Assembly: GCF_963676685.1 (NCBI RefSeq)
Contig: NC_092346.1
Location: forward strand, 101,246,001 to 101,310,000
Direction of reading: 5' to 3'
Length of the DNA stretch: 64,000 bases
DNA from: Mytilus edulis
Taxonomy: Eukaryota
In this document: piece by piece, positions 10,178-49,639 of the stretch
Numbering within the stretch: position 1 is the stretch's first letter
Layout: each line of letters opens with the position of its first letter
Notes under the pieces: generated by a model
Seen by the model: only the letters and a program-made list of their open reading frames with translations
Told to the model about the DNA's origin: nothing
The model's database searches: none
Program-made: the position numbers and the translations under genes

Positions 10178-13100
10178 CCAGCCATAACAGATCAAAACTT
10201 TCCAACACAAGACAATACCAACAACAACATACCCAGCTATCACAGATAAAAACTTACCAACACAAGACAATACCAACAACAACATACCCAGCCATCACAG
10301 ATAAAAACTTACCAACACAAGACAATACCAATAACAGCATACCCAGCCATCACAGATAAAAACTTACCAACACAAGACAATACCAATAACAGCATACCCA
10401 GCCATCACAGATAAAAACTTACCAACACAAGACAATACCAATAACAGCATACCCAGCCATCACAGATAAAAACTTACCAACACAAGACAATACCAATAAC
10501 AGCATACCCAGCCATCATAGATAAAAACTTACCAACACAAGACAATACCAATAACAGCATACCCAGCCATCACAGATAAAAACTAACCAACACAAGACAA
10601 TACCAATAACAGCATACCCAGCCATCACAGATAAAAACTTACCAACACAAGACAATACCAATAACAGCATACCCAGCCATCACAGATAAAAACTTACCAA
10701 CACAATACAATACCAATAACAGCATACCCAGCCATCACAGATAAAAACTTACCAACACAAGACAATACCAATAACAGCATACCCAGCCATCACAGATAAA
10801 AACTTACCAACACAATACAATACCAATAACAGCATACCATGCCATCACAGATAAAACTTACCAACGCAAGACAATACCAATAACAGCATACCCAGCCATC
10901 ACAGATAAAAACTTACCAACACAAGACAATACCAATAACAGCATACCCAGCCATCACAGATAAAAACTTACCAACACAAGACAATACCAATAACAGCATA
11001 CCCAGCTATCACAGATGAAAACTTACCAACACAAGACAATACCAATAACAGCATACCCAGCCATCACAGATAAAAACTTACCAACACAAGACAATACCAA
11101 TAACAGCATACCCAGCTATCACAGATGAAAACTTACCAACACAATACAATACCAATAACAGCATACCAACACAAGACAATACCAATAACAGCATACCCAG
11201 CCATCACAGATTTATATAATAGTTCTTGAAAAACTGGTAATTATCGTGATATATGGACTGCCCACAGGACAGTGATATTGACTAAGATAGTGATAATGAC
11301 TGAGCCGAAGGCAAGGTCATTATCGCTGTCGCAGCCAATACCACTGTCCTACGGGCAGTCCATATATCACGATAATGACCAGTTTTCAAGAACTATTATG
11401 TTTATTTCATTGAGAAACCATGATTTGGAAAATTCGCATAATTTTAAAATGCCTGAAGCAAACTCGATTTGTCGTATTATTTTTATGACAAAGAGTTAAG
11501 ACCAGTCGTTGTAATACGGCCATTCATTTTAGTGCAATTTTCCAGTTCATATATAAATACTTAATCAAGTTCTTTATAATTTTATAATTAAGAAAACATA
11601 TAATAAACAATTCAACAACTTAAATATAATATTGAAAACAGGAAAATCTCTCTTTTAAACAGAAAAACCACGCTCCACCAGTCATTAGCAGAGAAACCAC
11701 GCCCCAACGTTCATTATCAGACGGCAACCACGCCCCAACGGTCATTATCAGACGGAAACCACGCCCCACCGGTCATTATCATGTAAAAGTTTGTTAACCA
11801 CCGGTTTCCTGGTCCGTTTTGTTCTGTTAATGACCGATTGAATTTATCACTGAAGAATAATGAATGTCATGTGGCCCATTTTTATCCAATAATAAATGCT
11901 TATTCTTAACCGATATGAAATAAAAAAAACTTACCAACACAAGACAATACCAATAACAGCATACCCAGCCATCACAGATAAAAACTTACCAACACAAGAC
12001 AATACCAATAACAGCATACCCAGCCATCACAGATAAAAACTTACCAACACAAGACAATACCAATAACAGCATACCCAGCCATCACAGATAAAAACTTACC
12101 AACACAATACAATACCAATAACAGCATACCATGCCATCACAGATAAAAACTTACCAACACAAGACAATACCAATAACAGCATACCCAGCCATCACAGATA
12201 AAAACGTACCAACACAATACAATACCAATAACAGCATACCAAGCCATCACAGATAAAAACTTACCAACACAAGACAATACCAATAACAGCATACCCAGCC
12301 ATCACAGATAAAAATTTACCAACACAAGACAATACCAATAACAGCATACCCAGCCATCACAGATAAAAACTTACCAACACAAGACAATACCAATAACAGC
12401 ATACCCAGCCATCAATAACAGAATACCCAGCCATCACAGATAAAAACTTACCAACACAAGACAATACCAATAACAGCATATCCAGTCATCACAGATAAAA
12501 ACTTACCAACACAATACAATACCAATAAGAGCATACCCAGCCATCACAGATAAAAACTTACCAACACAATACAATACCAATAACAGCATACCCAGCCATC
12601 ACAGATAAAAACTTACCAACACAAGACAATACCAATAACAGCATACCCAGCCATCACAGATAAAAACTTACCAACACAAGACAATACCAATAACAACATA
12701 CCCAGCCATCACAGATAAAAACTTACCAACACAAGACAATACCAATAACAGCATACCCAGCCATCACAGATAAAAACTTACCAACACAAGACAATACCAA
12801 TAACAGCATACCCAGCCATCACAGATAAAAACTTACCAACACAAGACAATACCAATAACAGCATACCCAGCCATCACAGATAAAAACTTACCAACACAAG
12901 ACAATACCAATAACAGCATACCCAGCCATCACAGATAAAAACTTACCAACTCAAGACAATACCAATAACAGCATACCTAGCCATCACAGATAAAAACTTA
13001 CCAACAGAAGACAATACCAATAACAGCATACCCAGCCATCACAGATAAAAACTTACCAACACAATACAATACCAACAACAGCATACCCAGCCATCACAGA

Positions 13101-14474
13101 TAAAAACTTACCAACACAATACAATACCAACAACAGCATACCCAGCCATCACAGATAAAAACTTACCAACACAATACAATACCAATAACAGCATACCCAG
13201 CCATCACAGATAAACACTTACCAACACAATACAATACCAAATAACAGCATACCCAGCCATCACAGATAAACACTTACCAACACAAGACAATACCAATAAC
13301 AGCATACCCAGCCATCACAGATAAAAACTTACCAACACAAGACAATACCAATAACAGCATACCCAGCCATCACAGATAAAAACTTACCAACACAATACAA
13401 TACCAATAACAGCATACCCAGCCATCACAGATAAAAACTTACCAACACAATACAATACCAATAACAGCATACCCAGCCATCACAGATAAAAACTTACCAA
13501 CACAAGACAATACCAATAACAGCATACCCAGCCATCACAGATAAATACTTACCAACACAATACAATACCAATAACAGCATACCCAGCCATCACAGATAAA
13601 AACTTACCAACAGAAGACAATACCAATAACAGCATACCCAGCCATCACAGATAAAAACTTACCAACACAATACAATACCAATAACAGCATACCCAGCCAT
13701 CACAGATAAAAACTTACCAACACAAGACAATACCAACAACAGCATACCCAGCCATCACAGATAAAAACTTACCAACACAATACAATACCAACAACAGCAT
13801 ACCCAGCCATCACAGATAAAAACTTACCAACACAATACAATACCAATAACAGCATACCCAGCCATCACAGATAAAAACTTACCAACACAATACAATACCA
13901 ATAACAGCATACCCAGCCATCACAGATAAACACTTACCAACACAGTACAATACCAATAACAGCATACCCAGCCATCACAGATAAACACTTACCAACACAA
14001 GACAATACCAATAGCAGCATACCCAGCCATCACAGATAAAAACTTAACAACATAAGACAATACCAATAACAGCATACCCAGCCATCACAGATAAAAACTT
14101 ACCAACACAATACAATACCAATAACAGCATACCCAGCCATCACAGATAAAAACTTACCAACACAATACAATACCAATAACAGCATACCCAGCCATCACAG
14201 ATAAAAACTTACCAACACAAGACAATACCAATAACAGCATACCCAGCCATCACAGATAAATACTTACCAACACAATACAATACCAATAACAGCATACCCA
14301 GCCATCACAGATAAAAACTTACCAACACAAGACAATACCAATAACAGCATACCCAGCCATCACAGATAAAAACTTACCAACACAATACAATACCAATAAC
14401 AGCATACCCAGCCATCACAGATAAAAACTTACCAACACAATACAATACCAATAACAGCATACCCAGCCATCACA
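10178..14474 (-). repeat. 55-bp satellite derived from the gene A exon-3/donor junction (about 65 copies)
   Basis: Minus-strand unit tgtgatggctgggtatgctgttattggtattgtcttgtgttg|GTAAGTttttatc, contiguous with the real exon 3 and interrupted at 11212-11924. Confidence 0.95.
11212..11924. mobile_element. non-autonomous element with a terminal palindrome of about 180 bp (Crypton-like architecture)
   Basis: Inverted arms 11217-11280 and 11336-11398, loop gagccgaaggcaag, tttatttca/tgaaataaa inverted pair, four internal 31-bp repeats. It inserts cleanly into one satellite unit. The family assignment is tentative. Confidence 0.7.
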
Positions 14475-14589
14475 AAGAATGTGAATCCTTTGTAAATGTC
14501 TACTGTGGCGTCATAAACAGCATTAGCCAAAAGAGAGCTTGCCATGTTACATATAAACTCGATGGCGGCAATTCCAGCAAAAACGGAAC
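14433..14589 (-). CDS. paralog A exon 3 (GSVFAGIAAIEF...AVIGIVLC)
   Basis: 157 nt, ttttag|...TG|gtaagt, same length as exon 3 in all four paralogs. Confidence 0.9.
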
Positions 14590-14699
14590 CTAAAATATAC
14601 CACAAATACATTACATAATATACAAATAAACAACAGAAATATCATCAAAAGAAAATCAAAATCTTGTTAAACCAAGAGTTTAAAGTGGTGAAGTTGTAA

Positions 14700-15075: not shown

Positions 15076-16068
15076 AGAATTTTAATGACGTTCTCTGACA
15101 AACGTTCTTCAGAATACTTGGGATCACTGCATACAACACTGTTGCAAAACAGGAATATATTATCATGTGACGCCGCATAAATCTTTTTTAATCCAGAATC
15201 GTGGTCCATTTATCGACTTAATTGCGTGTTATAGTGTTCTTTTTATATGTCTTTGTATATTTTTAACCTTTGTTATATGACTTTTTGTAGCATCCCTCTT
15301 GGCGTAGCTCAGTTTTTAACCTTTGTTATATGACTTTTGGTAGCATCCCTCTTGGCTTAGCTCAGTTTTTATATATCCTGCCATTGTGTTATTGTACTTT
15401 TTTAAGTTTTCGTATTCTTGTCTTTCAATTTGTTCTTGTATGCTGTGTCATAAGAGTGACTGCATGCCTTTTGTTTATCTTTGCTGACATAGTTATTTGT
15501 TTTTATAAGTGATATAAATTATAACACAATATTGACTGAAATGTAACCAAGTCAGGAATATGACAGTGTTTTCCTCTCGTTTTGCTTTTGCCATTTGTTG
15601 AGAGACTTTCCGTTTCCAATATTCCATACACAGTATTTTTGTTATTTTTTTACTTTTGGTTTACAAAAAAATATATCTAAGCCTTCTACGAATTATTTGG
15701 CTTCGTTTTGCATTTGATCTATTAAGTTTCGAAATATCAGTAAGAATGAAGCTATATCACATACTTCATCACAAATATTTAAAAAAAGGCTGGTCATCCC
15801 ACATCTTCTTTTTTATATTGTGTTTTAATAATATATATAAGTTTTGTTCTGTGTTCCATTGCTAGTGAAATTGCAGATATATGAAAGTAATTTAAAAGTA
15901 CAGTAAGACCAAGCTTTAATGATTTTGAGAATTGAACATCAAGTTTGTCTCTTCTTTTTTCACACTACTGTTCGCTAAATTTCTTTTCATTCAATCATTC
16001 GTAGAAAACATAAAACGGATCGATAAAAAGCAGAATGAGCATTTGTATGGCTTAATATATTTACTCAC

Positions 16069-16152
16069 CTATTTTATGAGCTGGAGACATACGTGACATT
16101 ATTGATCTTACAATTGGCATAGTCACTGTATTCCCAAAGTTCAGCACTGCAG
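16069..16152 (-). CDS. paralog A exon 2 (AAVLNFGNTVTMPIVRSIMSRMSPAHKIG)
   Basis: 84 nt, cag|...|gtgagt, phase 1-1, homologous to exon 2 of the other paralogs. Confidence 0.9.
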
Positions 16153-16670
16153 CTGCGAATACAAAACAAATATATTTTCTCAAACTTCATACATTTATTT
16201 GTTTTATTTGTTTTATGAAATGGTGATCGTTATCTTTTTGCATACACTTTTATGTAAAGTTAAACAAAAATAATTTTAACATAAAACAAATCGACCACTT
16301 AAAGCCTCAATTATATGAGCATCCTATGAGCATCCTAGTATGTTAAGTATGGTGTGTGTAGCAATGTCTGAATAAATAGAGATTAATGATCAACTAAAAA
16401 AATGCTTTAAGGTAAATGTGAAAAAAATATAGAACAATGCGGTTCAAAAGCGAAAGAACTACTATTGAAAATAAAAGATTTAAGTTATAAAATACTGATT
16501 ACAGAAATTAGCTATCTTATTTCAGAAATGTTAGAAAATAAAATCATTTTCATGAGAATATCAAAGAATGCGCGTCATTCTTTAAGACACAAAAAATGCT
16601 CTTAAAATTTGACAAATACAGAAATAAGTGAGCCCCGATCTAGACAACAATGTAGTGTATAGAAACATAC

Positions 16671-17835
16671 CTATATAAATCATGGTATCTGTAGTTGAAA
16701 GTCCGAATACAATGGCAGAAATCACTGAAGTTGCAAAACCAGTCAGTGCAATATATTCATCGTTCACACAAAAGTGGAAAGTCTTGATCATTATCATTCC
16801 TCCGATAGATAACATTCCTATTTTTAAAGCGCCATACCAACCGATTCTGACTGAATCCCAACAGAAAGGAGAATTTAGTTCATACAGCGTTTCGACTTGA
16901 ATTCGCCCCAAATTCGCAAAACCAGACAAAATAAAAATGAATAAAAGATTTATGAACATCCACCGTTTTCCGTGAGGTGAGAAATTTGGCCTGTAGCATT
17001 CTGTTGCTCTCCCCATGTTCTCCAAAAAGGAAACCTTATCTCTCCTTTTTGACGGCGGAAGTGACTCCGGAAGTACGAAAACAGCAATCATAAGCCCTAG
17101 TAGAACAAAACCAACAGATGTTACTTCCGGGTAAAAGAATCCACCTGTCCATTTAATAAGATAGCCTGAAAATGTTGAGGAAATAAATGCTGCTATTCCA
17201 ATAATTCCTTCTAAAATACCATAAATAAGTGATCTGGGTTTCCCAGGCTCTGTAAGGTCGGCAATATAGCAATATACCATCAACATAGTGGATATCCAGT
17301 TTCCGGTACACCCTTCTATACCGTAAAATATAATAAAAAGTTCTATATTCAAACCATAGTAAATCCCTACACAACAAAGACCATTTTTAAGAACGGTCCC
17401 TATAAGAGGTGCCACGAAGAATAGTTTTCTTCCGTAAGCATCACTTAATGATCCAATATTGATTGTAAAGATGATACCAGGAATATTACTGGCAAGTGTA
17501 CAATAAATACCCCATTCGGAAGTTAGTTTCTGTATTACGATCTGCTGCTTATATTCTGTGGTATTGGTGTTTTGTTCACACGCGGATGTATTTCCTGATG
17601 ACTTGAGTGAAGAGTTTGGAAACGTTTTTTCATAATATGCCTTATAGGAATACTGATTCATCACATACAAATTCAGAAGATAGGAAACAAAATGTAGAAA
17701 GACAACAATTATTCCAAGAGACAACGTCAGCCATCTTGGAAATCCAGTTTTCTTTATTTGTTCATTGTGCTGTTGTGTACAGTTTTCGTCTTCTAAAAGT
17801 GGCCTTTTTTCAATAACGTCTTCATTACCTTTCAT
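16671..17835 (-). CDS. SLC46-family MFS transporter paralog A, large coding exon 1 (about 496 aa in total)
   Basis: ORF 16582..17865 has MFS motif A (GSLSDAYGRK), YIAD, LPESL and the LYELNSPFCWDSVRIGWY motif typical of SLC46. It ends at donor ATAG|gtatgt (phase 1). The start codon is uncertain: ATG 17835, or an upstream exon using the acceptor at 17829-30. Confidence 0.9.
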
Positions 17836-19667
17836 TACAAAAGATTGATGACATGAATTCTTCAATTTGTTCTAACAGCACTGTTTCATACTCCTTGGAT
17901 TAAAGATAAATTCGCTATTTAAAACATTTTTATTTTTGAATACATTGTTGATGTTATTTGAAAGAGTAAACCGTCAACAGTATCTAATGTGTCTTTTTTT
18001 CTTGATTTGTTTTCTTTTGGTTTGGTTTTGTTTTTTTGTTTCTTTTGATTTTTTTAAGTTTATACAATATTTATTTTTTCTGTTTTCAACTGTTTTGGAC
18101 TATAAATTACTTTGGTTTTTCTTTTTCTATGTTTATAGAATTGAAATGTGTTGAAAAAATACCGTATTGTATGAAAATAAGGAGGTGTGGTATCATTGAC
18201 AATGAGTATCCCCCATATACCAAATGACGTAGATATTAGCACCTATTGGACACTATACGGACTTCAACAATGACAGTACCCATACTGTATAACAAGCTAT
18301 AACAGACATGACAAAATGTAAAACAATACAACAATTCAAACGAAAAATTAAGCGGTTTATGAACTGTTAAACGTTTATTTGATTTAAAAAAATCGGATTT
18401 TAGTACATGAAATAATATCTTCACATAGTGTATTCCAGATCTACCATAAACTTGGTACATATTTAAATTTCAGAAACTAATATACACTTGATTTACTTGT
18501 AGTAAGTTTTATTTTAAACGAAAATTTTCCAGAGTAAAACTCATTTGAACAACTTGTATAGAAATATATCTTTGTTATATATTTACTACTTCTAAGAAAC
18601 AAATGTTGCAATCTGATTGGTTAATTAACCGTGTGTTAATTGCACACCACCAAACATAGATACTATATGTACATCAGGGTATTAAAAAAACCGAAAGAAA
18701 CAGAAAATTTTGCCAAAATATCGTCTCAAAAACCAAACTTTAAAAAAATGGAATTAAAAAAAAATGTCACATTCCCCCAAAATATAAGCTACTCGAAATA
18801 TGGAAAACTCTTAGAAAACTTGACAGTGCCAAAATTGCACTGATTACCAAATGTATATCCAATTTGCAAAACAGAGACATAAATATTTTAGATTGTATCT
18901 AACTATGGTCAAATATACATTTCTGTACAGGTGTGTCATCTCTAAAGTTTCTTAAAAGAGGGGCGAAAGATACCAGAGTGGCAGTCTTAAAATGTATTCT
19001 GTCTTGTCATAAGATTTTTAATGAAAGGATAAAGAGAAAAGCTTACTGTTGTGGTTTAATTCTGTCCCCTTGGAGATTAATCGTGGTCATGTGATTTGAT
19101 ATCATTACATATGACCTAATAACTTGTATCGTTACACAAAGCTATCTAATTTATACGTAAATGATAATTTACTTACGGAGATAGATTTGCACAATACATA
19201 TGTAGAAGAGGGACGAGAGATACCAAAGGGACAGTCAAACTCATAAATCTAAAACAAACTGACAACGCCATGGCTAAAAATGAAAAAGACAAACAAACAA
19301 CAGCACACACGACACAACATAGAAAACTAAAAAAAAAAACAACACGAACCCCATTGTTGAGCAGATACTTCTAAAAGTGCTTTAGACTGACGTCATCAAA
19401 TCCGCCGTTATTTTTTTCAAATTGCTTTGGGCTTTGGCCTTGGATTTTTTTTTTTTTTTTTTTTTGTGGTTGTTTCTCAACGTTCTTTTTTGTGATATTT
19501 TTGCTATGAATTTTTAAAAATTGCACATATGAAAGAAAGTTTAACGAAGAGGTTGAAAACAATTTCGTATTCCACCAAATGATGCAAAGCATCACTTAAC
19601 AGTTTAATTTCGGTCCATCCTTCGCTTGTGTTTTTTGTTATCATTGAGTTGTCATGTTATGCGTTTA

Positions 19668-22254: not shown

Positions 22255-23045
22255 TATGGGTTTGATGTCTGTGTTTCTTCGCCATGTTGGTGGTTTTGGT
22301 ATATTTTTGTCCTTCCTCTTTTAATTGTTTTTGATGTCTGTGTTTCTTCGCCATGTTGGTGGTTTGGGTATATTTTTGTCCTTCCTCTTTTAATTGTTTT
22401 TGTTGTCTGTGTTTCTTCGTCATGTTGGTGGTTTGGGTAAATTTTTGTCCTTCCTCTCTTATTTTTAATTGTTTTTTATGTCTGTGTTTCTTCGTCATGT
22501 TGGTGGTTTGGGTATATTTTTGTCCTTCCTCTCTTATTTTTAATTGTTTTTGATGTCTGTGTTTCTTCGTCATGTTGGTGGTTTGGGTATATTTTTTCCT
22601 TCCTCTTTTAATTGTTTTTGATGTGTGTGTTTCTTCGTCATGTTGGTGGTTTGGGTATATTTTTGTCCTTCCTCTTTTAATTGTTTTTGATGTGTGTGTT
22701 TCTTCGCCATGTTGGTGGTTTGGGTATATTTTTGTCCTTCCTCTTTTAATTGTTTTTGATGTGTGTGTTTCTTCGCCATGTTGGTGTTTTGGGTATATTT
22801 TTGTCCTTCCTCTTTTAATTGTTTTGATGTCTGTGTTTCTTCGTCATGTTGGTGGTTTGGGTATAGTTGTGTCCTTCCTCTCTTATTTTTAATTAATTTT
22901 GATGTCTGTGTTTCTTCGCCATGTTGGTGGTTTTGGTATATTTTTGTCCTTCCTCTTTTAATTGTTTTTGATGTCTGTGTTTCTTCGCCATGTTGTTGGT
23001 GTTTTGTATATTTTTGTCCTTCCTTTTTTATTTGTTTTGATGTCA
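22255..23045. repeat. 69/75-bp tandem array (about 11 copies)
   Basis: Unit tttgatgtctgtgtttcttcgccatgttggtggtttgggtatatttttgtccttcctcttttaattgtt. Confidence 0.92.
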
Positions 23046-23357: not shown

Positions 23358-24238
23358 ATCTGTATAGACACTGGTCTGACATTGTTGGTGAAATTTTCAT
23401 GTTTTTAAAAGTGAATGCATTTCAATCTGAGCAGTGAAGTCGAAAGGAACTGTATCGTATTCAGACGTATGTAAGTGCCCTCTTGACAAACTTTGCCAGC
23501 GATTCGATATATCTATAGTTGCCGTGTTTTGTAATATATAATAGGGACAAATAATATTAGGTGTCTATTAATAATAACGACACATAATCAGTAAAGCAAA
23601 CAACAAAAAATAAAATTGAACAGCGCTGTTATTGCTGTTCTTCATCTTAAAATCAAAGTAAAGCCTTCAAAACAGAGCGAACATCCTCACATAATTGAAA
23701 GTTTAATACGGTCCTTAGCACTGCTTTGTAATTCTTTGAGAAATGACAATCAAGCCGCAAATGTGGACAGAAAAACAAGATCATAGAATAATATTAATAA
23801 AAATGAATCTGGCTATGCAATCAATAATTTACCGTCTCAATTTAGCGAGATCCTTTCAGAACACCTTTTTATCATAGAATACCTTACCCTCTCAAGCCAG
23901 GGGAAATTTTCTTCAGCCTTCAAACAACACGAGAGACAAACTGCGGTTAGTTATCCCATCCGGTAATATATGTTTCGTAACATTACTTTTGAATATGTAA
24001 GTGGTAGGTTTTTATTATAGACAAAATGACATAGAAATAAGTAAAATGGACATGCTGAAAATAGGTGAACATTGTATTGTATTTAAAAACTCAATGTATG
24101 ACATTATGTACATGTATGTCTAAATTTTCTCTTTCCCACATTACACGTGTTTCTGCTTTTTTTCACTATCTGTGAATTCTACCTTTATAGTTGTTTTTTT
24201 CTAGCTTTAATTCAAGTTTTTCCCAATAACATGTATTT

Positions 24239-24332
24239 CTACTTCTTTCCACTGGCTGTAAATTCTACTTTTATAGTTGTTTCTTCCTGCTTGAATTCAA
24301 GATTTCCTCTCCGCTTTCCTTTTATCAGAATT
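24239..24332 (-). CDS. paralog B terminal exon (ILIKGKRRGNLEFKQEETTIKVEFTASGKK*)
   Basis: Acceptor ttttacttgtacag|, phase 2, TAG stop, similar to the paralog C tail. Confidence 0.8.
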
Positions 24333-25056: not shown

Positions 25057-25213
25057 AAACAAAGTATGATCCCTACAACACTAAAAGCTGCCCATATTAA
25101 AAATACCATGCCTCTGTAGACATCGACAGTCGCTTTATAGATACCATTCATTAGTAGTCCCCCAACAAGAGCACATAGGAGCTCTACTGCGGCAACACCG
25201 GCAAACACAGATC
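25057..25213 (-). CDS. paralog B exon 3 (GSVFAGVAAVELLC...VVGIILCL)
   Basis: 157 nt, aatag|...TT|gtaagt. This frame is not shown in the ORF track. Confidence 0.9.
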
Positions 25214-25568
25214 CTATTAGAAGAAATGGACATATATATATATATATAAATATGGTATGTTCTTAGAACACCTGTGTTGGTGAAATCATCATACCTAAAA
25301 CAAATGTGTATATCCACTAACAAACAGAAAATATATGACCAATCAAGAGACCAAATATAATAACGTGTTATAAAAAGATTTTCATTTAAAAAAGAAAGCT
25401 AAAAACAAAAGAAGTACTTCACAAGATATTCAAAACGTTTTGATATGCTTTTGTGTGTCAGTTTTCTGGCTTTCTTTATGTTGATACAAGTCGGGCAATA
25501 TTGATATTTTTTGAAATAAAGAAATATTTGTACAAACTTAAAAGTGACATTAAAATAAATCTGCTGAC

Positions 25569-25652
25569 CTTGCTTATTAGCTGGTGTCATTCGAGACATT
25601 ATGCTCCTGGACATTGGCATGGTTACAATACAACCTAGACTGGCGGCAGCAG
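25569..25652 (-). CDS. paralog B exon 2 (SAAASLGCIVTMPMSRSIMSRMTPANKQG)
   Basis: 84 nt, tttcag|...AAG|gtcagc. Confidence 0.9.
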
Positions 25653-26093
25653 CTGAAATAGAAATATTGGCATGGTTACAATACAACCTGGACTAGCGAC
25701 AGCAGCTGAAATAGAAACATTGGCATGGTAACAATACAACCTAGACTGGCGGCAGCAGCTGAAATAGAAATATTGGCATGGTTACAATACAACCTAGACT
25801 GGCGGCAGCAGCTGAAATTGAAACATTGGAATGGTTACAATACAACCTAGACTGGCGGCAGCAGCTGAAATTGAAACATTGGAATGGTTACAATACAACC
25901 TAGACTGGCGGCAGCAGCTGAAATTGAAACATTGGAATGGTTACAATACAACCTAGACTGGCGGCAGCAGCTGAAATAGAAATATTGGCATGTTTACAAT
26001 ACAACCTAGACTGGCGACAGCAGCTGAAATAGAAATTTTGGCATGGTTACAATACAACCTAGACTGGTGGCAGCAGCTGAAATTAAAACATTG
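25611..26093 (-). repeat. 53-bp array derived from the gene B intron-1 acceptor and exon-2 start (9 copies)
   Basis: agctgaaat (= atttcag|CT on the minus strand) at 25651, 25704 ... 26075. Confidence 0.95.
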
Positions 26094-26915: not shown

Positions 26916-28056
26916 ACAAGTACATCATTAAGTCCGACTGTGCCAGGCCTTCCAGAATCAATGATGCTAATGTGGTGAAACAACCAGCTAAAGCTATCAC
27001 TTCATCTGATGAACAAAAATGGAATACTTTAATTATAATCACTGCTCCTAAATTAAAGAAACATATCCGTACAGACGAGTATACTCCAATTTTCACAGAG
27101 TCCCAACAAAATGGGGTATTTAGCTCGTATAACGTTTCTACATTGTGTCTGCTTAAATTTGAAATGGCTGACATTGAAAATATAAAAATTAATATAATGA
27201 ACATCCAGCGTTTCCCTTTTGGTGAGAAGTCTGAAGAGTAACATTCGAAAACCCTCTTCATGTTATCTAAAGGTGAAACATGTTTACGTTTTCTTGACTC
27301 TGGAAGAGATTCTTGAATCATTGTTAACGCAAGAAGTAATCCAATGCTTACAACGCACGAGGCAATAACATCTGGATAGAAAAACCCGTCGGTTAATGAT
27401 ATCAGATACCCCGATATGAATGTTCCAATGAAAGCACCAATCCCGAGACCACCTTCTAACAAACCAATTAGAATCGATCTGCCTTTTCCTTCTTCTGTTG
27501 TGTCAGCAATGAAACACAAGGACATAGAAAGTGTTCCAAACCAGGATCCAGTACAAACTTCTATCATGTAAAAGAACAGAAGATATCTCACATCAATTTC
27601 ATAATAAATTCCAATTGCACAAAGCGCACTTTTAAGCATACTACCTGCTAATGGTATAATGAAAAATAGTTTTCTACCGTATACGTCACTGTACGTGGCG
27701 AGATTGATATTGGAAAACATCCCTGGAATGATATAGGAAAGACTGCAAATCATGCTCCATTCTGCTGATATTTTCTGTACGGCTACTTGTTGTTGATATC
27801 CAACAGTGCTTGTATTAGTTGTACATGTTGGTAATTTCTCGGAAGTATCGGAAGCATTTGGATATTCTTGTTTCATGAATTTATAATAAGTATACTGGTT
27901 TAAAAGAAACAGGCTCAACATGAAGGACAGTATGTGGCATAATGGAATTGCTATTACCACGGAATATGTCAGCCATCTTGGATATTTAAGCTTAACGAAT
28001 TCTATTGCGTTACTGTGAAGTAATGGTTTTTCCTCTTGGTTCTCTGTTTTGCTCAT
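26916..28056 (-). CDS. SLC46-family MFS transporter paralog B, large coding exon 1 (about 491 aa in total)
   Basis: MSKTENQEEKPLL..., ATYSDVYGRK, LYELNTPFCWDSVKIG. Upstream acceptor ttttag| at 28076-77, donor T|gtaagt. Confidence 0.9.
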
Positions 28057-29199
28057 AGTTTCAATCTTTAAGGATCTAAAACAATAACAATTGCATACGA
28101 ATAAGGTAGATGAATTATTATAACGTTTTGTTGTCAATTAATATTAAAAAAAAAAAGAGATGTAATTTGATTGCCAATGAGACAACTCTTTAAAAGAGAC
28201 CAAAGTGACACAGAAATCAACAACTGTAGGTCACTGTACGGATTTCAACTACGAGTATAGGCCTCAAAATGACATATGTAAAAATATTCAAACGAGAAAA
28301 ATAACGGCCTTTATATATGTACAAATAAATGAATGAACAACGAATATGTAAAACATCAACAAACGACAACCATTGAATTACAGACTCATGATTTGCGCTG
28401 GACACAAAAAATAATACTGAATATGTCGGGGTTAAACATGTAAGTGGGATCCCAACCCTCACCCTAATCTGGGACTGTGCTGTAACAAGAACTATGCAAA
28501 TCAGTTGAAAAAGGCTTCATATGGATACAAATAAAAATACATCTTACATCTCCACAGAGTGGACGTGGCCGTTTACGTGTACATCCCAAAACAAAGAGAT
28601 CCTTAGTCAAGATCTGAGAGTACTTGCAGTTACTGACTGCTACTTCAAAGCCAATAACAAATAATAAAACGAATCATGCATCTAAGATATTATCAATCAA
28701 TAATTTATATACTTTGATATTTTTTTTCTTTAACATCTAACTTCTGAAATTGTAAATCAACAACATGGTATTTCTTTATTTTCTTTGTTTCGCTGTCTTG
28801 GTTTGTACATCACTCGTAAAAATATCATAATTGTATATCATGTGTAACTGTTACATATATAAGTATATTGTTATTACTTACAAGATGGTTTACTGTCAAA
28901 TATGTTCGTTTCTCATCATCATTAAACCATCAAACATGTAATATTCTTTCTAATCAGGGTATATATTATTTTATGATAATGTCGATCCACATTGTCACAT
29001 CTAACTTAAGGTTATATATTGACTGTTATCACACATTGTTTCCTTTATAGTGTAAATACTGATAAACATTTTGTAAATAATTATAAAACAATGGTATTGG
29101 GCTTTGTTATAAGATATTTAAGTTAAAAATTGTTTGTTTCGATTTTTGAAACCCGCTTTTTTCGATAGAAAACTTGTGTTGATATTCTTCGATTTTCTG

Positions 29200-31942: not shown

Positions 31943-33098
31943 ATGACACCCAAGATAGCCTATGATAGATCCGAGGAGACACCATTATTGGTAAATAAAG
32001 ACAACTGTGAAGATATCAAACTTAGGTATCCAAGATGGCTGACATTTTCCATTTTAATTAGCATACCATTCCTACATATGCTGTCCTATATTTTAAGTTT
32101 ATACGTGATTGGACAATATACTTATGTTTATTTCCTTGAAGAAAAGTTTCCCGGTGTTCCACATTCTCTGAGCGGAAGTCTTTCGTCGTGTAATATAAAT
32201 AAATCTTCAATTGCATACTTCATAGAATCCAGTATACAACAAACTTCTGCTAAATGGGCCATCTATACAAATCTTGCTTTCATTATTCCTAGTGTTTTGA
32301 TAAATATAAATCTAGCAACATATAGTGACGTCCATGGTAGAAAACTGTTCTTTATAGTTCCTTTAGCTGGCACGATCATCAAGAATATTTTGTGTGCGGT
32401 AGGAATGTATTATAAAATGAATGTGAGACTGATGTTAATCTTTTATATGATTGAGGCGTGCACTGGTTCTTGGGTTGCTTCCCTTTCAATGTCCTTTTGC
32501 TTTGTTGCTGACACAACGACACCTGGGAAAGGTCGTTCGCTCATTATAAGTCTTCTTGATGGTGGAGTAGGATTGGGGGCTATTGGGGCCTCTCTTTTGT
32601 CAGGATATTTGATCACGTGGACTAATGGGTATCATTATCCACAACTCATGGCAGTCATTATAGCAATTATTCCATTTCTATGTGTACTGACCATGGTACA
32701 AGAAACGCTGCCAATATCAAGAAGACGGTCAAATGTTTCAATTCTCCAAAACATTCAAAGAGTATTCGACTGTTATAGAAGTAATTTCTCTCCATTCGGG
32801 AAGCGATGGGTGTTCGTTGTTCTCATTATTACATTTGCAATGTCGGCACTGACTGTTTTAAGCAGGGCAAGTGTGGATAGTCTGTATTTTGTCAGCGCGC
32901 CTTTTTGTTGGAGCTCTATTACAATTGGACTATACACTGGGATACGAACCGTTCTGTGGAACATAGGCGGAGTAATTTTGATAATAATATTACAGATCTG
33001 TACTACAGATGAGGTTATATCGCTTGTTGGATGTATAACCACTACAGCAGCATTAATTATACAAGGACTGGCTAAAACAAATCTTATGATGTATATAG
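31943..33098 (+). CDS. SLC46-family MFS transporter paralog C, large coding exon 1 (about 497 aa in total)
   Basis: MTPKIAYDRSEETPLL..., ATYSDVHGRK, PFCWSSITIG. Upstream acceptor ttttatcag| at 31934-35, donor ATAG|gtatgt. Confidence 0.9.
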
Positions 33099-33468
33099 GT
33101 ATGTACGACTAAATATATGTATAATTGGTGTCAGATCATTCATATACATATTTTTTATAGACAAACTTTCAACGTTTATCAAACGCGTGCTTCACTTTCA
33201 AATCAGTACATTAAAACATTCTTTCTACTTCATAGTAATAAAAAAAAACATATTTCAATTCTAAATGTGGATACATAATTGTCACTATATGTTGTGCTAA
33301 CCTTTCTAAAATAAAGAATATGGTCAGGCCGTATATTGACCTGTAATGGTTTACTTTTATAAATTGTTATTTGGATGGAGAGTTATATAAAGCCCCAGTC
33401 CCACTAGACCACGATCGCACTACGCTCACCGTGATCTAAAATAAATTCAGATCGTGGTGAGGTCGCGT

Positions 33469-35003
33469 TATCTAGTATAGAATGTATTGTGTCGATGCCA
33501 ATGATCAGAGGGATAATGTTCCTGTCTATATTAGCTTGTACTGTAGGTAAACATTTTATTTCAGCTGCCCTATCTAGTATAGGATGTATTATGAAGATGC
33601 CAATGATCAGAGGGATAATCTCCCTGTCTATATTAGCTTGAACTGTAGGTAAACATTTTATTTCAGCTGCCCTATCTAGTATAGGATGTATTATGTCGAT
33701 GCCAATGATCAGAGGGATAATGTTCCTGTCTATATTAACTTGTACTGTAGCTAAACATTTTATTTCAGCTGCCCTATACAGTATAGGATGTATTATGACG
33801 ATGCCAATGATCAGAGGGATAATGTACCTGTCTATATTAACTTGTACTGTAGCTAAACATTTTATTTCAGCTGGCCTATACAGTATAGGATGTATTATGA
33901 CGATGCCAATGATCAGAGGGATAATGTACCTGTCTATATTAACTTGTACTGTAGCTAAACATTTTATTTCAGCTGGCCTATACAGTATAGGATGTATTAT
34001 GACGATGCCAATGATCAGAGGTATAATGTACCTGTCTATATTAACTTGTACTGTAGCTAAACATTTTATTTCAGCTGCCCTATACAGTATAGGATGTATT
34101 ATGACAATGTCAATGATCAGAGGGATAATGTTCCTGTCTATATTAACTTGTACTGTAAGTAAACATTTGATGTCAGCTGCCCAATCCAGTATAGAATGTA
34201 TGATGACAATGCCAATGATTAGAGGGATAATGTCCCTGTCTATATTAACTTGTACTGTAGCTAAACATTTTATTTCAGCTGGCCTATACAGTATAGGATG
34301 TATTGTGACGATGCAAATGATCAGAGGGATAATGTTCCTGTCTATATTAGCTTGTACTGTAGTTGAACATTTTACTTCAGCTGGCCTATACAGTATAGGA
34401 TGTATTGTGAAGATGCCAATGATCAGAGGGATAATCTCCCGGTCTATATTAGCTTGAACTGTAGGTAAACATTTTTTTTCAGCTGCCCTATACAATGTAT
34501 ATGTCAATGTCAATGATCAGGGGAATAATGTTCCTGTCTATATTAGCTTGTACTGTAGTTGAACATTTTACTTCAGCTGCCCTATCTAGTATAGGATGTA
34601 TTATGAAGATGCCAATGATCAGAGGGATAATCTCCCTGTCTATATTAGCTTGAACAGTAGGTAAACATTTTTTTTCAGCTGCCCTATACAATGTATATGT
34701 CAATGTCAATGATCAGGGGAATAATGTTCCTGTCTATATTAGCTTGTACTGTAGTTAAACATTTTATTTCAGCTGCCCTATATATGACAATGTCAATGAT
34801 CAGGGGAATAGTGTCTCTGTCTATATTAGCTTGTACTGTAGGTAAACATTTTGTTTCAGCTGCCCTATATATGACAATGTCAATGATCAGGGGAATAATG
34901 TCTCTGTCTATATTAGCTTGTACTGTAGGTAAACATTTTGTTTCAGCTGCCGTATCAAGTATAGGATGTATTGTGACGATGCCAATGATCAGAGCTATAA
35001 TGT
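33469..35003 (+). repeat. 102/94/87-bp array derived from the gene C intron-1 acceptor and exon-2 start (15 acceptor copies)
   Basis: tcag|ctg at 33565, 33667, 33769, 33871, 33973, 34075, 34177, 34279, 34381, 34483, 34577, 34679, 34773, 34860 and 34947. Confidence 0.95.
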
Positions 35004-35030
35004 CCAGGATGACACCGCCTGAAAAGCAAG
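34947..35030 (+). CDS. paralog C exon 2 (AAVSSIGCIVTMPMIRAIMSRMTPPEKQG)
   Basis: 84 nt, tttcag|...AAG|gtactc; it is the last unit of the 102-bp array. Confidence 0.88.
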
Positions 35031-35436
35031 GTACTCTGTCAGAATTCTAGTGGTACTAGTTTCAAATAAGGAAAATAGAAAGAGTACAAAAATAGGATAA
35101 CAAAACATGCCACAAAACAAGTACTTGATATTGGAAAGTACTAGGTACCTTCAGGTTTATGCTCTTATAATATCCTAGATTATGGAATTATCACTGAACT
35201 AGTATATATTTGTTTAAGGGCCAGCTGAAGGACGCCTCCGGGTGCGGGAATTTCTCGCTACATTGAAGACCTGTTGGTGACCCTCTGCTGTTGTTTTTTA
35301 TTTGGGCGGGTTGTTGTCTCTTTGACACATTCCCCATTTCCATTCTCAATTTTATAACTCTACATGCAGACTTCTTATACGTTTAGGTATTTCATATCCA
35401 ACATTTTTGCCAGCGGCTACAAGCATATTTCAGACG

Positions 35437-38971: not shown

Positions 38972-38974
38972 TTT

Positions 38975-40149: not shown

Positions 40150-40306
40150 GCTCTATTTTTGCTGGCGTTGCTGCTGTAGAATCGTTCTCCAGTTTATTTG
40201 GTACAGTGGTTATCGGTATAATATATGATTCCACAGTAACTATTTATAGAGGACTAACATTCCTTATATGGGCGGGAATTGGCGGTATTGGCATCATTCT
40301 GTCATT
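40150..40306 (+). CDS. paralog C exon 3 (GSIFAGVAAVESF...GIGIILSL)
   Basis: 157 nt, ttcag|...TT|gtaagt. Confidence 0.9.
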
Positions 40307-41238: not shown

Positions 41239-41335
41239 AATATTGATTATGGAAAGGAGGAAGCGACCAGCAGCTAATCAAACCAGTCAGTCTAATATTG
41301 TGATAAAAGTCGATTCATCAGTTACAGGAGAATGA
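41239..41335 (+). CDS. paralog C terminal exon (ILIMERRKRPAANQTSQSNIVIKVDSSVTGE*)
   Basis: Acceptor ttttattatag|, phase 2, TGA stop. Confidence 0.8.
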
Positions 41336-42538: not shown

Positions 42539-42590
42539 TCACGTCGGTGTTACGTCTGATAATGTTCTCTTCTTCTCGCTTATAAACAAT
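42539..42590 (-). CDS. paralog D terminal exon (LFISEKKRTLSDVTPT*)
   Basis: Acceptor tttctatttgtag|, phase 2, TGA stop; possibly shortened by a frameshift. Confidence 0.7.
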
Positions 42591-43164: not shown

Positions 43165-43548
43165 TAAAATTTCAATCCTGGTATCTATGATGAGTTTATT
43201 TACAACTACTGGGTCGATGCCACTGCTGTTGTGGTCTTAATTCCCCGAGCGTATCACCATCCCAGTAGGCAGCACTTCTGTGTTGACTTGAGTTATCATT
43301 GATATGGTCATAGTTATAAATTAAGTGTTAACAAAAGTTTGAATTTTTTAATTACTAATGCTTTTCTACCTTAGCTTTTTTTGGAAACACTTTAAGGAAT
43401 TTTTGGTCCTCAATGCTCTTCAACTTCGTACTATATTTGGCCTTTTTAACAATTTTTATTCGAGCGTCACTGGTGCGTCTCTTGTAGACGAAACACGCGT
43501 ATGGCGTAAATACAAAATTTCAATCCTGGTATGAATGATGAGCTTATT
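43165..43548 (+). mobile_element. retrozyme-like monomer with terminal direct repeat and decayed hammerhead
   Basis: atcctggtat.tatgatgag repeated with period 348; hammerhead-like segment 43462-43507. Confidence 0.7.
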
Positions 43549-43792
43549 GGTACTCATAATTGAATAGTATCTTTTATTTCTTACAAATGCAACAATTTAC
43601 AATGTTTTAACTACCGCTGATTCACTGACAAGCATAATACGGTTATGTTATTTATAATTCTCGTACTTACAATATAAAGTGATTCCTACTCCACCATACT
43701 CGGCAATAACAAAAATTGTCATCCCTTTGTAATGGTCTACCTTGTACTAACAACCATATGACCTTTATAATTATTACTATTATCGTACTTAC

Positions 43793-43949
43793 AAACATAA
43801 AATGATTCCTACTCCACCGTACCCGGCCATTACAAAAAATGTCATCCCTTTGTAATAGTCTATTGTGGCATCGTATATAGCGTTAGCACTAACAGAGGCT
43901 CCCATATTACAGATCACCTCCACAGCTGCCACTCCAGCAAATATTGAAC
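43793..43949 (-). CDS. paralog D exon 3 (GSIFAGVAAVEVIC...GVGIILCL)
   Basis: 157 nt, ttag|...TT|gtaagt. Confidence 0.9.
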
Positions 43950-45796
43950 CTAATAACATAAAATGTATACATGTTTCCTTAACAACTCCTCTAATTTTAA
44001 ACAAAATATCGTCATGATGGCAAGCAGCAATAAACACACAATTCATTTACTATAATTTGGTTGTTTTATAACATTTTATGCTACTTTGATCCATGGACAT
44101 TTACTATACTTTGGTTGTTTTATAACATTTTATGTTACTTTCATTCATGAACATCTTCTCTTTTTTCTTTCTGTACCATGCTATATATCGTCAAAAACGT
44201 CTTCCCCATTAGATATAACTGCATTGGCTAGAGGTATAGGGGGAGGGTTGAGATCTCATAAACATGTTTAACCCAGCCGCATTTTTGCGCCTGTCCCAAG
44301 TCAGGAGTTTCTTGTGTACAATTTGGAGTTTAGTATGGCGTTCATTATCACTGAACTAGTATATATATTTGTTTAGGGGCCAGCTGAAGGACACCTCCGG
44401 GTGCTGGAATTTCTCGCTGCATTGAAGACCTGTTGGTGACCTTCTGCTGTTGTCTTCTCTATGGTCGGGTTGTTGTCTCTTTGACACATTCCCCATTTCC
44501 ATTCTTAATTTTAATATAAACTGTCACTATAACATATCAATGTAAAACAATCAGAAATTTCTGTGTCGGGTTACACAGGTAAAATACTAAGCAACTATTT
44601 AAAAGGGGAACTAAGCTAAAAGCAACAAGACGAATATACACAAGAAATATACATACGAACATAGAAAACGTATATCATTACTTGTAAGACTGTAAAAAAT
44701 CCCAACACAGAACTTGGACTGATAACAGGGTGACGGTAAGCATATCCTGTTACAAACCTTATCTGGTGTGTTCAAGTTGGTAATAAATTAAATTAAGGTA
44801 ATATGTGAACGGTCAATAATTACAAAATTACATGCATGATACTATTTTACAATATCTTCACGCAAGAAAAAGAACCGATAATCGTTTTATCGTTCTAAAA
44901 GTACCTGTGGTCTTTTGCCATTTTTTACCTTGACCAAAGGAAGCTTGATAACGCCACCTCATACGCTGTGAAGTCGGTATCAATTTCTACTGAGACACTG
45001 CCCATGTCTCAAAGCCGTTATTCGAGAATTACGGAGCGACTATGCAGGGTAATATACGAGAAGGGAAGAACGACAAGAGTTATTCATGGAATGCAACAGG
45101 CTAAAAGGAACATTTGCCAGGCTCAAAGATATGCTGTTGTCTGTATGGAATTCGGGATATCCATTTACATGAACGACTGATTTCTGAATCACCGATATCT
45201 CCACCTTCCTTACAGTAGTCAGCAAATACAGATTACGGGTAGTAGGGTTATAACATAAACAGCACATAGCTGATGAGATGATACATCATAATGTTATACT
45301 GAATAAAACATTGTCAATCTTGCTTGTGAGGAGGTGTCATCTGGGACATAATTGCTCTAAACAATGTTAATGTTACAACTCTACCAGAACTCCAATTATT
45401 TTGTTCATGTTTGCTTATGTGCTTTGTCGATATTCCATTTGGATTTTGTTTTTATTGTTAACCTGTTTGTTTGTTTTAATAGTGATTAAGATTATAACAC
45501 AATTTTAACTGCTGTACCCCTATCTATGAATTATTTACCTATTATATCATTTTGTTTTGTTCACATGTTGTTGTAAATATAATGATATGCGACTGTCTTA
45601 GCTTTAGCTACTTGTCCTATAAAACCAGATGTGATTCACCATTTTCTACACAGAAATTTCTGTATCAAGTCAGGATCATAACAGTTGTGTTCCATTCGTT
45701 TGAAATGTATGAGCTTTTGATGTTGCCATTTGATAAGGGACTGTCCGTTTTGAATTTTCCTTGGAGATGGGTATTTTTTGTTATTTTACTTTTTAC

Positions 45797-45880
45797 CTTG
45801 TTTGTGTGGAGGAGTCATCTGGGACATAATTGCTCTTACCATTGGCAAGGTTACAACACTACCAATACTAGCACCAGCAG
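45797..45880 (-). CDS. paralog D exon 2 (AAGASIGSVVTLPMVRAIMSQMTPPHKQG)
   Basis: 84 nt, tttttag|...AAG|gtaaaa. Confidence 0.88.
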
Positions 45881-49615: not shown

Positions 49616-49639
49616 ATCCATCCTGGGTTTGACAACATA

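What the first reader, a model, noticed from the sequence alone, without database searches (positions are those of the whole stretch)
10178..45880. Splice-junction satellites: all four SLC46 paralogs have duplicated or amplified the same exon regions
Seen: three intronic satellites consist of the host gene's own exon edge plus splice site. A has the exon-3 donor x~65 (55 bp), B the exon-2 acceptor x9 (53 bp) and C the exon-2 acceptor x15 (102 bp). D carries single decayed duplicates of exon 2 and of the exon-3 donor. Units match their own paralog and have different periods, so the events arose independently after gene duplication yet hit the same two regions. The GT/AG consensus is kept in nearly all copies. 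Inference: these junctions are recurrent amplification hotspots. The arrays could also act as copy-number-variable decoy splice-site dials that tune productive versus NMD-targeted mRNA in a transporter family.
Basis: partly seen in the sequence, partly recalled or inferred. Interest (0 to 1): 0.9.

Follow-up and report, generated by a model that had tools for sequence, protein, structure and literature searches.

The report
Exon-edge minisatellites in mussel SLC46 genes
Three neighbouring mussel transporter genes each carry an intronic tandem repeat copied from their own exon edge plus its splice signal; this kind of repeat is already known ("mirage" minisatellites), and the one gene that could be checked still splices normally.

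Summary
The window is Mytilus edulis-like chromosome DNA with four SLC46/PCFT-like MFS genes, and a fifth lies just upstream.

- **Array A:** about 65 units of 55 bp, each the last 41 nt of exon 3 plus 14 nt of intron. 59 carry exact GGTAAGT.
- **Array B:** 8 decoy acceptors plus the real one, 53 bp units.
- **Array C:** 14 decoy acceptors plus the real one, units of 102, 94 and 87 bp.
- **Gene D:** two decayed two-copy duplications.

All three arrays occur only at this locus, and each matches its own paralog best. They are far younger than the gene duplications.

The functional reading is not supported. GT and AG are no better kept than other unit positions. A spliced 1685-nt RNA contig of gene B uses only the canonical (last) acceptor, with no RNA depth over the array.

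The kind is known: amphioxus "mirages" and the human F7, CBS, IFI6, LMNB2 and PDGF junction minisatellites, where the authentic site is normally used.

A placement bias has modest support. A post-hoc simulation gives P about 8e-4. Genome-wide, GGTAAGT sits in 37-67-bp ladders 2.2-2.7 times more often than three control heptamers.

This scan has noted similar arrays on other DNA of the same genome. One of them, in GPR155, was followed up with the same verdict.

The parts
16671..17835 (-). Gene A, large coding exon ('exon 1')
   Evidence: tblastn to P0009, the M. trossulus SLC46A3-like ortholog, 95.7% identity. Donor ATAG|GTATGT.
16069..16152 (-). Gene A exon 2 (84 nt), not amplified
   Evidence: tblastn. 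cag|CTGCAG ... ATAG|gtgagt.
14435..14589 (-). Gene A exon 3 (155 nt). Its last 41 nt form the first unit of array A.
   Evidence: Authentic donor TTG|GTAAGT at 14434.
10178..14474 (-). Array A: about 65 units of 55 bp (exon-3 end plus 14 nt of intron), 59 exact GGTAAGT
   Evidence: TRF, unit list, motif counts. 98.2% identity to the consensus. Found nowhere else in the genome.
11212..11926 (-). Insertion of about 715 bp interrupting array A, with 31-bp internal repeats and a terminal palindrome. It looks like a transposable element.
   Evidence: and TRF row 11665-11781. Argues against an assembly artefact.
9847..10120 (-). Older, decayed 35/70-bp repeat derived from the exon part of the A unit only
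   Evidence: TRF, 70-75% matches. 81% identity to A exon 3 over 42 nt. Sequence.
8412..8496 (-). Gene A exon 4 (C-terminal tail plus stop), beyond the array
   Evidence: tblastn to P0009 residues 469-496, 92.9% identity. Acceptor tattacag|.
26916..28075 (-). Gene B large exon
   Evidence: RNA contig X1 record 1, tblastn, Pfam MFS_1.
25611..26093 (-). Array B: 53-bp units (12 nt of intron with AG, plus 41 nt of exon 2). 8 decoy acceptors plus the real one.
   Evidence: Found nowhere else in the genome. No RNA depth over it.
25569..25652 (-). Gene B exon 2 (84 nt). Its acceptor is the last one of the array.
   Evidence: The RNA contig joins 26916 to 25652.
25057..25211 (-). Gene B exon 3
   Evidence: RNA contig. 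Donor TTT|GTAAGT.
24135..24332 (-). Gene B exon 4 (tail, stop, start of the 3' UTR)
   Evidence: RNA contig. Matches the P0024 tail.
31964..33098 (+). Gene C large exon
   Evidence: tblastn. 100% and 98% identity to P0018 and P0019.
33469..35005 (+). Array C: 14 decoy acceptors plus the real one. Units of 102, 94 and 87 bp (45 nt of intron plus about 57 nt of exon 2).
   Evidence: Found nowhere else in the genome.
34947..35030 (+). Gene C exon 2 (84 nt)
   Evidence: The ortholog P0019 has a single exon-2 copy.
40150..40304 (+). Gene C exon 3
41239..41335 (+). Gene C exon 4
   Evidence: Matches the P0019 tail.
46235..47393 (-). Gene D large exon
   Evidence: 99-100% identity to P0001 and P0003.
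45797..45880 (-). Gene D exon 2
45319..45386 (-). Decayed copy of most of D exon 2, 478 bp downstream in intron 2. It has no acceptor, and the donor GT is changed to AT.
   Evidence: 85% identity over 68 nt. Alignment A2. Protein match.
43795..43949 (-). Gene D exon 3
43624..43739 (-). Second copy of a two-copy tandem duplication (period about 123) of the D exon-3 end plus donor
   Evidence: 81% identity over 117 nt. Alignment A1 keeps TTGTAAGTAC. Protein match.
42539..42590 (-). Gene D exon 4

Best explanation
These are junction-spanning minisatellites of the kind called "mirages" in amphioxus.

**Origin (inferred).** In each gene a short segment of 53-123 bp straddling an exon-intron boundary was duplicated in tandem. 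The likely route is replication slippage or template switching between short direct repeats.

**Expansion (inferred).** In genes A, B and C the duplication was then expanded and homogenised by unequal exchange. The real exon edge is therefore simply the terminal repeat of an intronic array.

**Independence (shown).** The events are independent, specific to this locus, and much younger than the gene duplications.

**Setting (shown).** They sit in a stretch of chromosome that is unusually prone to tandem repeats.

**Effect on the genes.** The extra splice sites are by-products, not a regulatory device. The spliceosome keeps using the authentic site: the first donor in gene A, and the last acceptor (the one followed by the rest of the exon) in genes B and C. 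The arrays are removed as intron.
- This is shown for gene B by RNA.
- For genes A and C it is inferred from orthologous gene models and from the behaviour of the same kind of repeat in other animals.
For: **Anatomy**
- The unit is exon edge plus splice signal, with the authentic exon as the end repeat.

**Slippage signature in B**
- The hexamer CAATGT lies both 18 nt upstream of the original acceptor and at +36 in exon 2. The two copies are exactly 53 bp apart.

**Concerted evolution and higher-order periods**
- Array A scores higher at periods 110 and 165, and array C at 204 and 306.
- A shows an alternating A/C variant pattern along the array.

**Locus-specific**
-.

**Young relative to old paralogs**
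-.

**Regional repeat richness**
- 27.8% tandem-repeat cover here, against 3.3% around the other paralogs.
- The neighbouring 69-bp and 33-bp arrays are also found only at this locus.

**No selection signal on GT or AG**
- A: 1 mismatch against 2.07 expected.
- B: 0 against 0.75.
- C: 0 against 1.10.

**RNA**
- A 1685-nt spliced contig lies as exon 1 (28075-26916), exon 2 (from 25652), exon 3 and exon 4.
- RNA depth across the array is zero.

**Cost of using a decoy**
- Every B decoy acceptor would give a premature stop.
- Every A decoy donor would leave TGG TAA in frame.

**Orthologs**
- The Mytilus models P0019 (C), P0024 (B) and P0009 (A) contain one copy of each exon.

**Literature**
- Amphioxus mirages do not disturb splicing and show concerted evolution (PMC3087553, PMC3902484).
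- Human F7: pseudo-donors are silent and the most upstream site is chosen. The same paper lists IFI6, CBS, LMNB2 and PDGF (PMC1557585).
- CBS 844ins68: the distal of two duplicated sites is used (PMC2630376).
Against: - RNA evidence exists for gene B only. It comes from assembled contigs, which drop rare isoforms.
- The two raw-read RNA runs did not express gene B. Minor decoy use therefore cannot be excluded.
- Splicing of A and C was not observed directly.
- The upstream edge of array C starts inside an exon-like part. A single simple duplication does not predict that.
- Four junction hits in two homologous junction classes exceed a uniform null.
- The genome-wide donor-ladder excess hints that placement is not purely random.
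Confidence: 0.8

Rival explanations
1. Exon-intron junctions, or these two junctions in particular, are true mutational hotspots for tandem amplification in this genome. The cause would be a process tied to transcription, splicing or chromatin at exon borders. This concerns how the arrays arise. It is compatible with their being functionless.
For: - Simulation: 0.69 junction-spanning seeds expected. P(3 or more) = 0.033, P(4 or more) = 0.006, and P(4 or more in at most two junction classes) = 8e-4.
- Genome-wide share of each heptamer lying in 3-rung ladders of 37-67 bp: GGTAAGT 3440/122202 = 2.82%; TGAATGG 1.26%; GTGATAG 1.26%; GATAGTG 1.03%.
- Many unchecked notes of this scan describe the same theme in unrelated genes of this genome.
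- The literature calls mirages 'possibly a more general phenomenon' in amphioxus, with an unknown mechanism (PMC3087553).
Against: - The local test is post hoc, on a window picked out for exactly this feature.
- Ladder counts are rungs, not arrays, and are heavily clustered. The first 100 donor matches come from about 9 arrays.
- Only three control heptamers were used.
- About 13 other paralogs with the same exon structure have no such duplication.
- The units show no hairpin propensity, with z-scores from -1.1 to +1.2.
Confidence: 0.3
2. One reading: the arrays are copy-number-variable decoy splice-site dials. They would divert part of the pre-mRNA to non-productive, NMD-targeted isoforms and so tune transporter expression.
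For: - The decoy sites are sequence-identical to the authentic ones.
- Nearly all would give premature stops.
- Each B unit carries a plausible branch-point-like TTGTAAC about 23 nt before the next AG (by eye).
- In human IFI6 and CBS the first two pseudo-donors are used at some level (PMC1557585).
Against: - Only the canonical B junction is seen, with zero RNA depth in the array.
- GT and AG show no excess conservation.
- The same kind of array in amphioxus and human is usually silent (PMC3087553, PMC3902484, PMC1557585).
- Copy-number variation was not tested.
Confidence: 0.06
3. A single ancestral junction array predates the gene duplications. It was inherited by all paralogs and kept similar to each gene's own exon by gene conversion.
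For: - All four adjacent genes are affected.
- B and C are sister genes and both carry exon-2 acceptor arrays.
- Array A has an older decayed generation next to it.
Against: - Different junctions are affected: donor 3 in A and D, acceptor 2 in B and C.
- B and C differ in unit boundaries: 12+41 nt against 45+57 nt.
- Paralog Z, the closest relative of A, and the C6 paralog have none.
- Identity levels differ widely (98%, 95%, about 89%, 81-85%), which suggests different ages.
Confidence: 0.06
4. The arrays are assembly artefacts, that is, mis-assembled or over-expanded repeats.
For: Long homogeneous arrays are hard to assemble, and no long reads could be laid here.
Against: - Units carry structured variants, and a 715-bp insertion interrupts A.
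- In a DNA run, word depth over array B is 2-6 times the flanks, and contigs break at the array edges. That run may be the assembly's own sample.
- An older M. edulis gene model (P0018) stops right after the gene C large exon. This fits a real obstacle there in another assembly.
Confidence: 0.03

Closest known systems
[quoted passage not shown] Sources: PMC3087553, PMC3902484.
   Same: - The units span an exon-intron boundary.
- Both 5' and 3' boundaries can be hit.
- Units are tens to about 160 bp long.
- Many units keep AG or GT.
- There is concerted evolution within the arrays.
- Regular splicing is not disturbed.
- The phenomenon recurs in many genes of one highly polymorphic marine invertebrate genome.
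   Different: - These are in a bivalve mollusc, and I found no mollusc report in the library.
- Array A is much longer (about 65 units, 4.3 kb) than the reported amphioxus cases.
- Four adjacent paralogs are hit at two homologous junctions.
- Length polymorphism and somatic instability were not tested here.
Human junction-spanning intronic minisatellites: F7 IVS7 37-bp VNTR, CBS 31-bp VNTR c.1444_1467+7(16_21), IFI6 (6-16) intron 2, LMNB2, PDGF. Sources: PMC1557585, PMC2630376.
   Same: - The first monomer spans the exon-intron boundary, so the donor is reiterated, as in array A and the D duplicate.
- The authentic, most upstream donor is used, and the pseudo-sites are normally silent.
   Different: - The human cases are all donor-side and have 5-26 units.
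- Here there are also acceptor-side arrays (B and C).
- Donor choice in gene A was not observed directly.
CBS c.844_845ins68: a duplicated intron 7/exon 8 junction. Source: PMC2630376.
   Same: - An acceptor-side junction is duplicated, giving two equivalent sites close together.
- The distal one, next to the rest of the exon, is used. Gene B does the same.
   Different: It is a single duplication in human, not an array of 9-15.
Decoy or poison exons and NMD-coupled alternative splicing (general knowledge)
   Same: Use of almost any decoy site here would create a premature stop.
   Different: - Those systems rely on conserved, regulated alternative sites that are demonstrably used.
- Here there is no use in RNA and no conservation signal.

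Membership tests
Mirage / junction-spanning minisatellite | The repeat unit contains an exon edge plus the adjoining intron bases with the splice signal, and the authentic exon edge is a terminal repeat. | tested here: met
   A: 41 nt of exon plus 14 nt of intron. B: 12 nt of intron plus 41 nt of exon. C: 45 nt of intron plus about 57 nt of exon. D: 68 nt of exon plus about 49 nt of intron, two copies.
Mirage / junction-spanning minisatellite | Head-to-tail tandem arrangement with a minisatellite-size unit | tested here: met
   TRF periods 55, 53 and 102, with 9-77 copies.
Mirage / junction-spanning minisatellite | Derived from the host gene itself, not from a dispersed satellite or transposon | tested here: met
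   Whole-genome searches find the arrays only at this locus. Units match their own exon best.
Mirage / junction-spanning minisatellite | Concerted evolution within the array | tested here: met
   Units are 94.5-98.2% identical to their consensus, while the paralogous exons are 79-87% alike. Higher-order periods are present.
Mirage / junction-spanning minisatellite | Normal splicing retained, with the authentic site used | tested here: inconclusive
   Met for gene B by a spliced RNA contig. A and C rest only on orthologous gene models. Rare isoforms are not excluded.
Mirage / junction-spanning minisatellite | Length polymorphism between alleles or individuals | not testable with these tools
Regulated decoy-splice-site / NMD switch | Decoy sites are used in transcripts | tested here: not met
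   Gene B shows only the canonical junction and zero RNA depth over the array. This is contig-level evidence from one run.
Regulated decoy-splice-site / NMD switch | Splice dinucleotides conserved above the background of the unit | tested here: not met
   Mismatches observed against expected: A, GT 1 against 2.07; B, AG 0 against 0.75; C, AG 0 against 1.10. None is significant.
SLC46 / PCFT-HCP family of MFS transporters (the host genes) | MFS fold and closest named relatives in SLC46 | tested here: met
   Pfam MFS_1 for B, C and D. Best homologs are named proton-coupled folate transporter-like or SLC46A3-like in Mytilus. Searches were made exon by exon, and transport function was not tested.

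The most novel reading that the evidence does not exclude
The mussel genome, like amphioxus, may have a general process that preferentially seeds or expands minisatellites at exon-intron junctions. The SLC46 cluster would be one visible outcome, and splice-site ladders would be a systematic feature of Mytilus introns rather than a set of coincidences. If so, the cause could be tied to transcription, splicing or chromatin at exon borders, or to extreme heterozygosity.
Probability: 0.25. Interest if true: 0.7.

Novelty: new member of a known kind. Interest (0 to 1): 0.35.

Why it matters
**Practical.** These arrays can derail gene prediction. An older M. edulis model of gene C (P0018) ends right after the large exon. 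They also inflate introns: 4.3 kb of the 5.9-kb intron 3 of gene A is array. Annotators of bivalve genomes should expect them.

**Biological.**
- They offer natural test beds for splice-site choice. Gene A has about 59 identical consensus donors in a row, and genes B and C have 9 and 15 identical acceptors.
- They extend the "mirage" phenomenon from cephalochordates and a few human genes to a mollusc.
- The modest genome-wide excess of donor-heptamer ladders, if it survives a proper annotation-based test, would point to an unexplained junction bias in minisatellite formation.

Tried and rejected
- **Dispersed satellite or transposon origin: rejected.** The arrays occur only at this locus. The weak 70% hits of array A are only (TATTGG)n and (CAATA)n microsatellites.
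- **Family-wide property of SLC46 genes: rejected.** Paralog Z just upstream, the C6 paralog, about 9 genes on C1, and the C3-48Mb, C9 and C8 paralogs have no tandem repeat or intragenic duplicate of exon 2 or 3.
- **Hairpin-driven slippage: no support.** DNA folding z-scores of the units are 0.78, -0.74, 1.18 and -1.11.
- **Other arrays of the window as exon derivatives: rejected.** Only A, its 35-bp neighbour, B and C match exons.
- **Raw-read RNA runs X21 and X24: uninformative.** They gave no coverage of gene B, so there are no junction read counts.
- **Rfam at gathering threshold: nothing found** in the window.
- **Spliced models:** One local script joined the gene B large exon to each candidate exon-2 start, only to look for stop codons.
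- **Complex prediction, structure prediction and the structure-search tools:** not relevant, not used.

Full report
**What the window is**

The four large open frames at 16585-17871(-), 26884-28137(-), 31883-33109(+) and 46233-47507(-) are MFS transporters (Pfam MFS_1). Their best relatives are Mytilus proteins named proton-coupled folate transporter-like or SLC46A3-like. P0003 of M. edulis is 100% identical and P0001 of M. galloprovincialis is 99% identical to gene D.

The window is G000:C3:101246001-101310000. The contig length equals that given for the M. edulis protein.

I mapped the small exons with tblastn of the returned orthologs and by reading the junctions. Each gene has:
- a large exon;
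- an 84-nt exon 2;
- a 155-nt exon 3 encoding the last two transmembrane helices;
- a short exon 4 encoding the tail.

The exon-3 donor is therefore real. Orthologs continue past it into a C-terminal tail.

All protein searches were made exon by exon by reference.

- **Array A (10178-14474).** It is made of 55-bp units: the last 41 nt of exon 3, then GTAAGT and 8 more intron bases. The real exon end is its first unit. About 65 units are recognisable, and 59 carry exact GGTAAGT. A roughly 715-bp insertion interrupts it. An older, decayed 35/70-bp repeat derived from the exon part alone lies beyond it at 9847-10120.
- **Array B (25611-26093).** It has nine copies of a 12-nt acceptor context plus the first 41 nt of exon 2. 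The ninth copy runs on into the real exon.
- **Array C (33469-35005).** It has fifteen acceptors in units of 102, 94 and 87 nt, the last being the real exon 2.
- **Gene D.** It has a two-copy tandem duplication of the exon-3 end plus donor (81% identity). It also has a decayed copy of most of exon 2, 478 bp downstream (85% identity), that has lost both splice signals.

**Independence and age**

Whole-genome searches find each array only at this locus. The weak hits of array A are microsatellites.

Units match their own paralog's exon best: 100% for A, 100% for B and 89% for C. To other paralogs the figure is 79-87%.

In a tree of the large exons, B pairs with C and A pairs with an upstream fifth paralog Z. 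Sequences from other species nest between them. The gene duplications are therefore old and the arrays young.

B and C differ in their unit boundaries (12+41 nt against 45+57 nt). This argues for separate events.

**Mechanism of origin**

In gene B the hexamer CAATGT occurs both 18 nt before the original acceptor and at +36 in exon 2. The two copies are exactly one unit apart, which is the classic substrate for slippage.

Higher-order periods and variant patterns point to later unequal exchange.

The units have no unusual hairpin potential.

The region itself is repeat-prone. Tandem repeats cover 27.8% of the window, against 3.3% of 140 kb around other SLC46-like paralogs. The neighbouring 69-bp and 33-bp arrays are also local inventions. 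The 110-bp satellite at 3826-7862 belongs to a dispersed family.

**Is the placement non-random?**

About 13 other paralogs elsewhere in the genome, and Z next door, have no such duplication. It is therefore not a property of the gene family.

I ran a uniform-placement simulation with the window's 22 arrays or duplications and 24 junctions. It expects 0.69 junction-spanning seeds, and gives P = 0.006 for four or more and 8e-4 for four or more confined to two junction classes. This is post hoc.

Genome-wide, I counted three-rung ladders (spacing 37-67 bp) of the consensus donor heptamer and divided by the heptamer's total count.

| Heptamer | Ladder rungs / total count | Share |
|---|---|---|
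| GGTAAGT (donor consensus) | 3440 / 122202 | 2.82% |
| TGAATGG (reversed control) | 2754 / 218123 | 1.26% |
| GTGATAG (scramble) | 1420 / 112815 | 1.26% |
| GATAGTG (reversed scramble) | 1148 / 111737 | 1.03% |

This is a 2.2-2.7-fold excess. However, it counts rungs rather than arrays, the matches are strongly clustered, and there are only three controls. I treat it as suggestive.

Earlier notes of this scan list many similar junction-seeded arrays in unrelated genes of the same genome. One of them, in GPR155, was followed up and reached the same conclusion as here.

**Function**

GT and AG are not better conserved than other unit positions. Observed against expected mismatches are 1 against 2.07 in A, 0 against 0.75 in B, and 0 against 1.10 in C. 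High overall identity explains their retention.

Consequences of using a decoy:
- A downstream donor in gene A would leave TGG TAA in frame.
- Any of the 8 upstream acceptors in gene B gives a premature stop.
- Only the last two 87-nt units of array C are in frame. This is read from the unit lengths and the open frame 34661-35047.

RNA runs hold 33-49% of the words of 25000-28100, which matches its exon content.

When reads were laid on 23400-28200, a 1685-nt contig of run X1 lies as four pieces: 28075-26916, 25652-25568, 25212-25057 and 24332-24135. It therefore uses the last, canonical acceptor. No RNA depth falls on the array.

The two raw-read RNA runs did not express gene B, so rare isoforms cannot be excluded.

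A DNA run shows raised word depth over the array, with contig breaks at its edges.

Orthologous Mytilus models contain a single copy of each exon. An older M. edulis model (P0018) stops just after the large exon of gene C, which suggests the array defeats gene prediction.

**Comparison with what is known**

This is a described kind.
- Amphioxus "mirages" are minisatellite-like duplications of intron/exon boundaries. They occur at either boundary, with units up to about 160 bp, concerted evolution and no interference with splicing. They have been proposed as a general feature of that genome (PMC3087553, PMC3902484).
- Human genes F7, CBS, IFI6, LMNB2 and PDGF have intronic minisatellites whose first monomer spans the exon-intron boundary. 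In F7 the pseudo-donors are functional but silent, because the most upstream site is chosen (PMC1557585).
- In CBS 844ins68 the distal of two duplicated junction sites is used (PMC2630376). Gene B behaves the same way.

I found no report of such repeats in molluscs in the held library.

**Verdict**

- Independent origin is supported.
- The hotspot idea has modest, post-hoc support.
- The decoy-dial idea is unsupported.
- This is a new member of a known kind. Its points of note are the length of array A, the four neighbouring paralogs involved, and a hint that the phenomenon is widespread in this mussel genome.

**Limits**

- There was one reads call only.
- No cross-species DNA could be examined.
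- No copy-number data were available.

Noticed in passing
window 11212-11926: An insertion of about 715 bp sits inside array A. It has four 31-bp internal repeats and a roughly 45-nt palindrome near its 3' end, and looks like a non-autonomous transposable element. It postdates part of the array.
   Followed up: partly
window 24527-24687 and 26129-26297: Two copies of an extremely abundant short dispersed repeat. Word depth reaches millions in the DNA run, and hundreds of reads appear in the RNA runs. They lie in introns 3 and 1 of gene B. The second copy ends about 35 bp upstream of array B.
   Followed up: no
window 3826-7862: A 110-bp satellite of 36 copies in the A-Z intergenic region. It belongs to a dispersed family: over 1000 first-look candidates, with 70-79% identical short copies on all chromosomes.
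   Followed up: partly
window 22261-23044 and 48210-49616: The 69-bp and 33-bp arrays are found essentially only at this locus. The region seems to generate local minisatellites at a high rate.
   Followed up: partly
window-wide (periods): Many arrays share a period near 53-56 bp or its double: 56 (1743-3105), 55 (A), 53 (15260-15371), 53 (B), 54 (44044-44154), 110 (3826-7862) and 102 (C). This is unexplained.
   Followed up: no
G000:C3:101242151-101245974 (just upstream of the window; L022): A fifth SLC46-like paralog (Z) on the minus strand, the closest relative of gene A. It has no tandem repeat at all in its 10 kb.
   Followed up: yes
window 31883-33109 and P0018: An older M. edulis protein model of gene C (401 aa) reads through the large exon's donor and stops. 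Annotated orthologs also start with a short extra 5' coding exon that the window's large open frame does not contain.
   Followed up: partly
window 34947-35030 against array C units: Array C units encode AALSS...IRGIM, like exon 2 of the M. galloprovincialis ortholog P0019. The window's real exon 2 reads AAVSS...IRAIM. The decoys may therefore preserve an older or alternative allele state.
   Followed up: no
window 43165-62700: Another first-reader note proposes hammerhead-ribozyme (retrozyme-like) repeats here. Rfam at gathering threshold found no family anywhere in the window. I did not run the more permissive search.
   Followed up: partly
G000:C1:2834436-2834595: A tandem array whose unit looks like a complete 34-nt mini-intron (GTAAGT ... 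TTACAG) repeated head to tail. It appeared in the donor-ladder listing.
   Followed up: no
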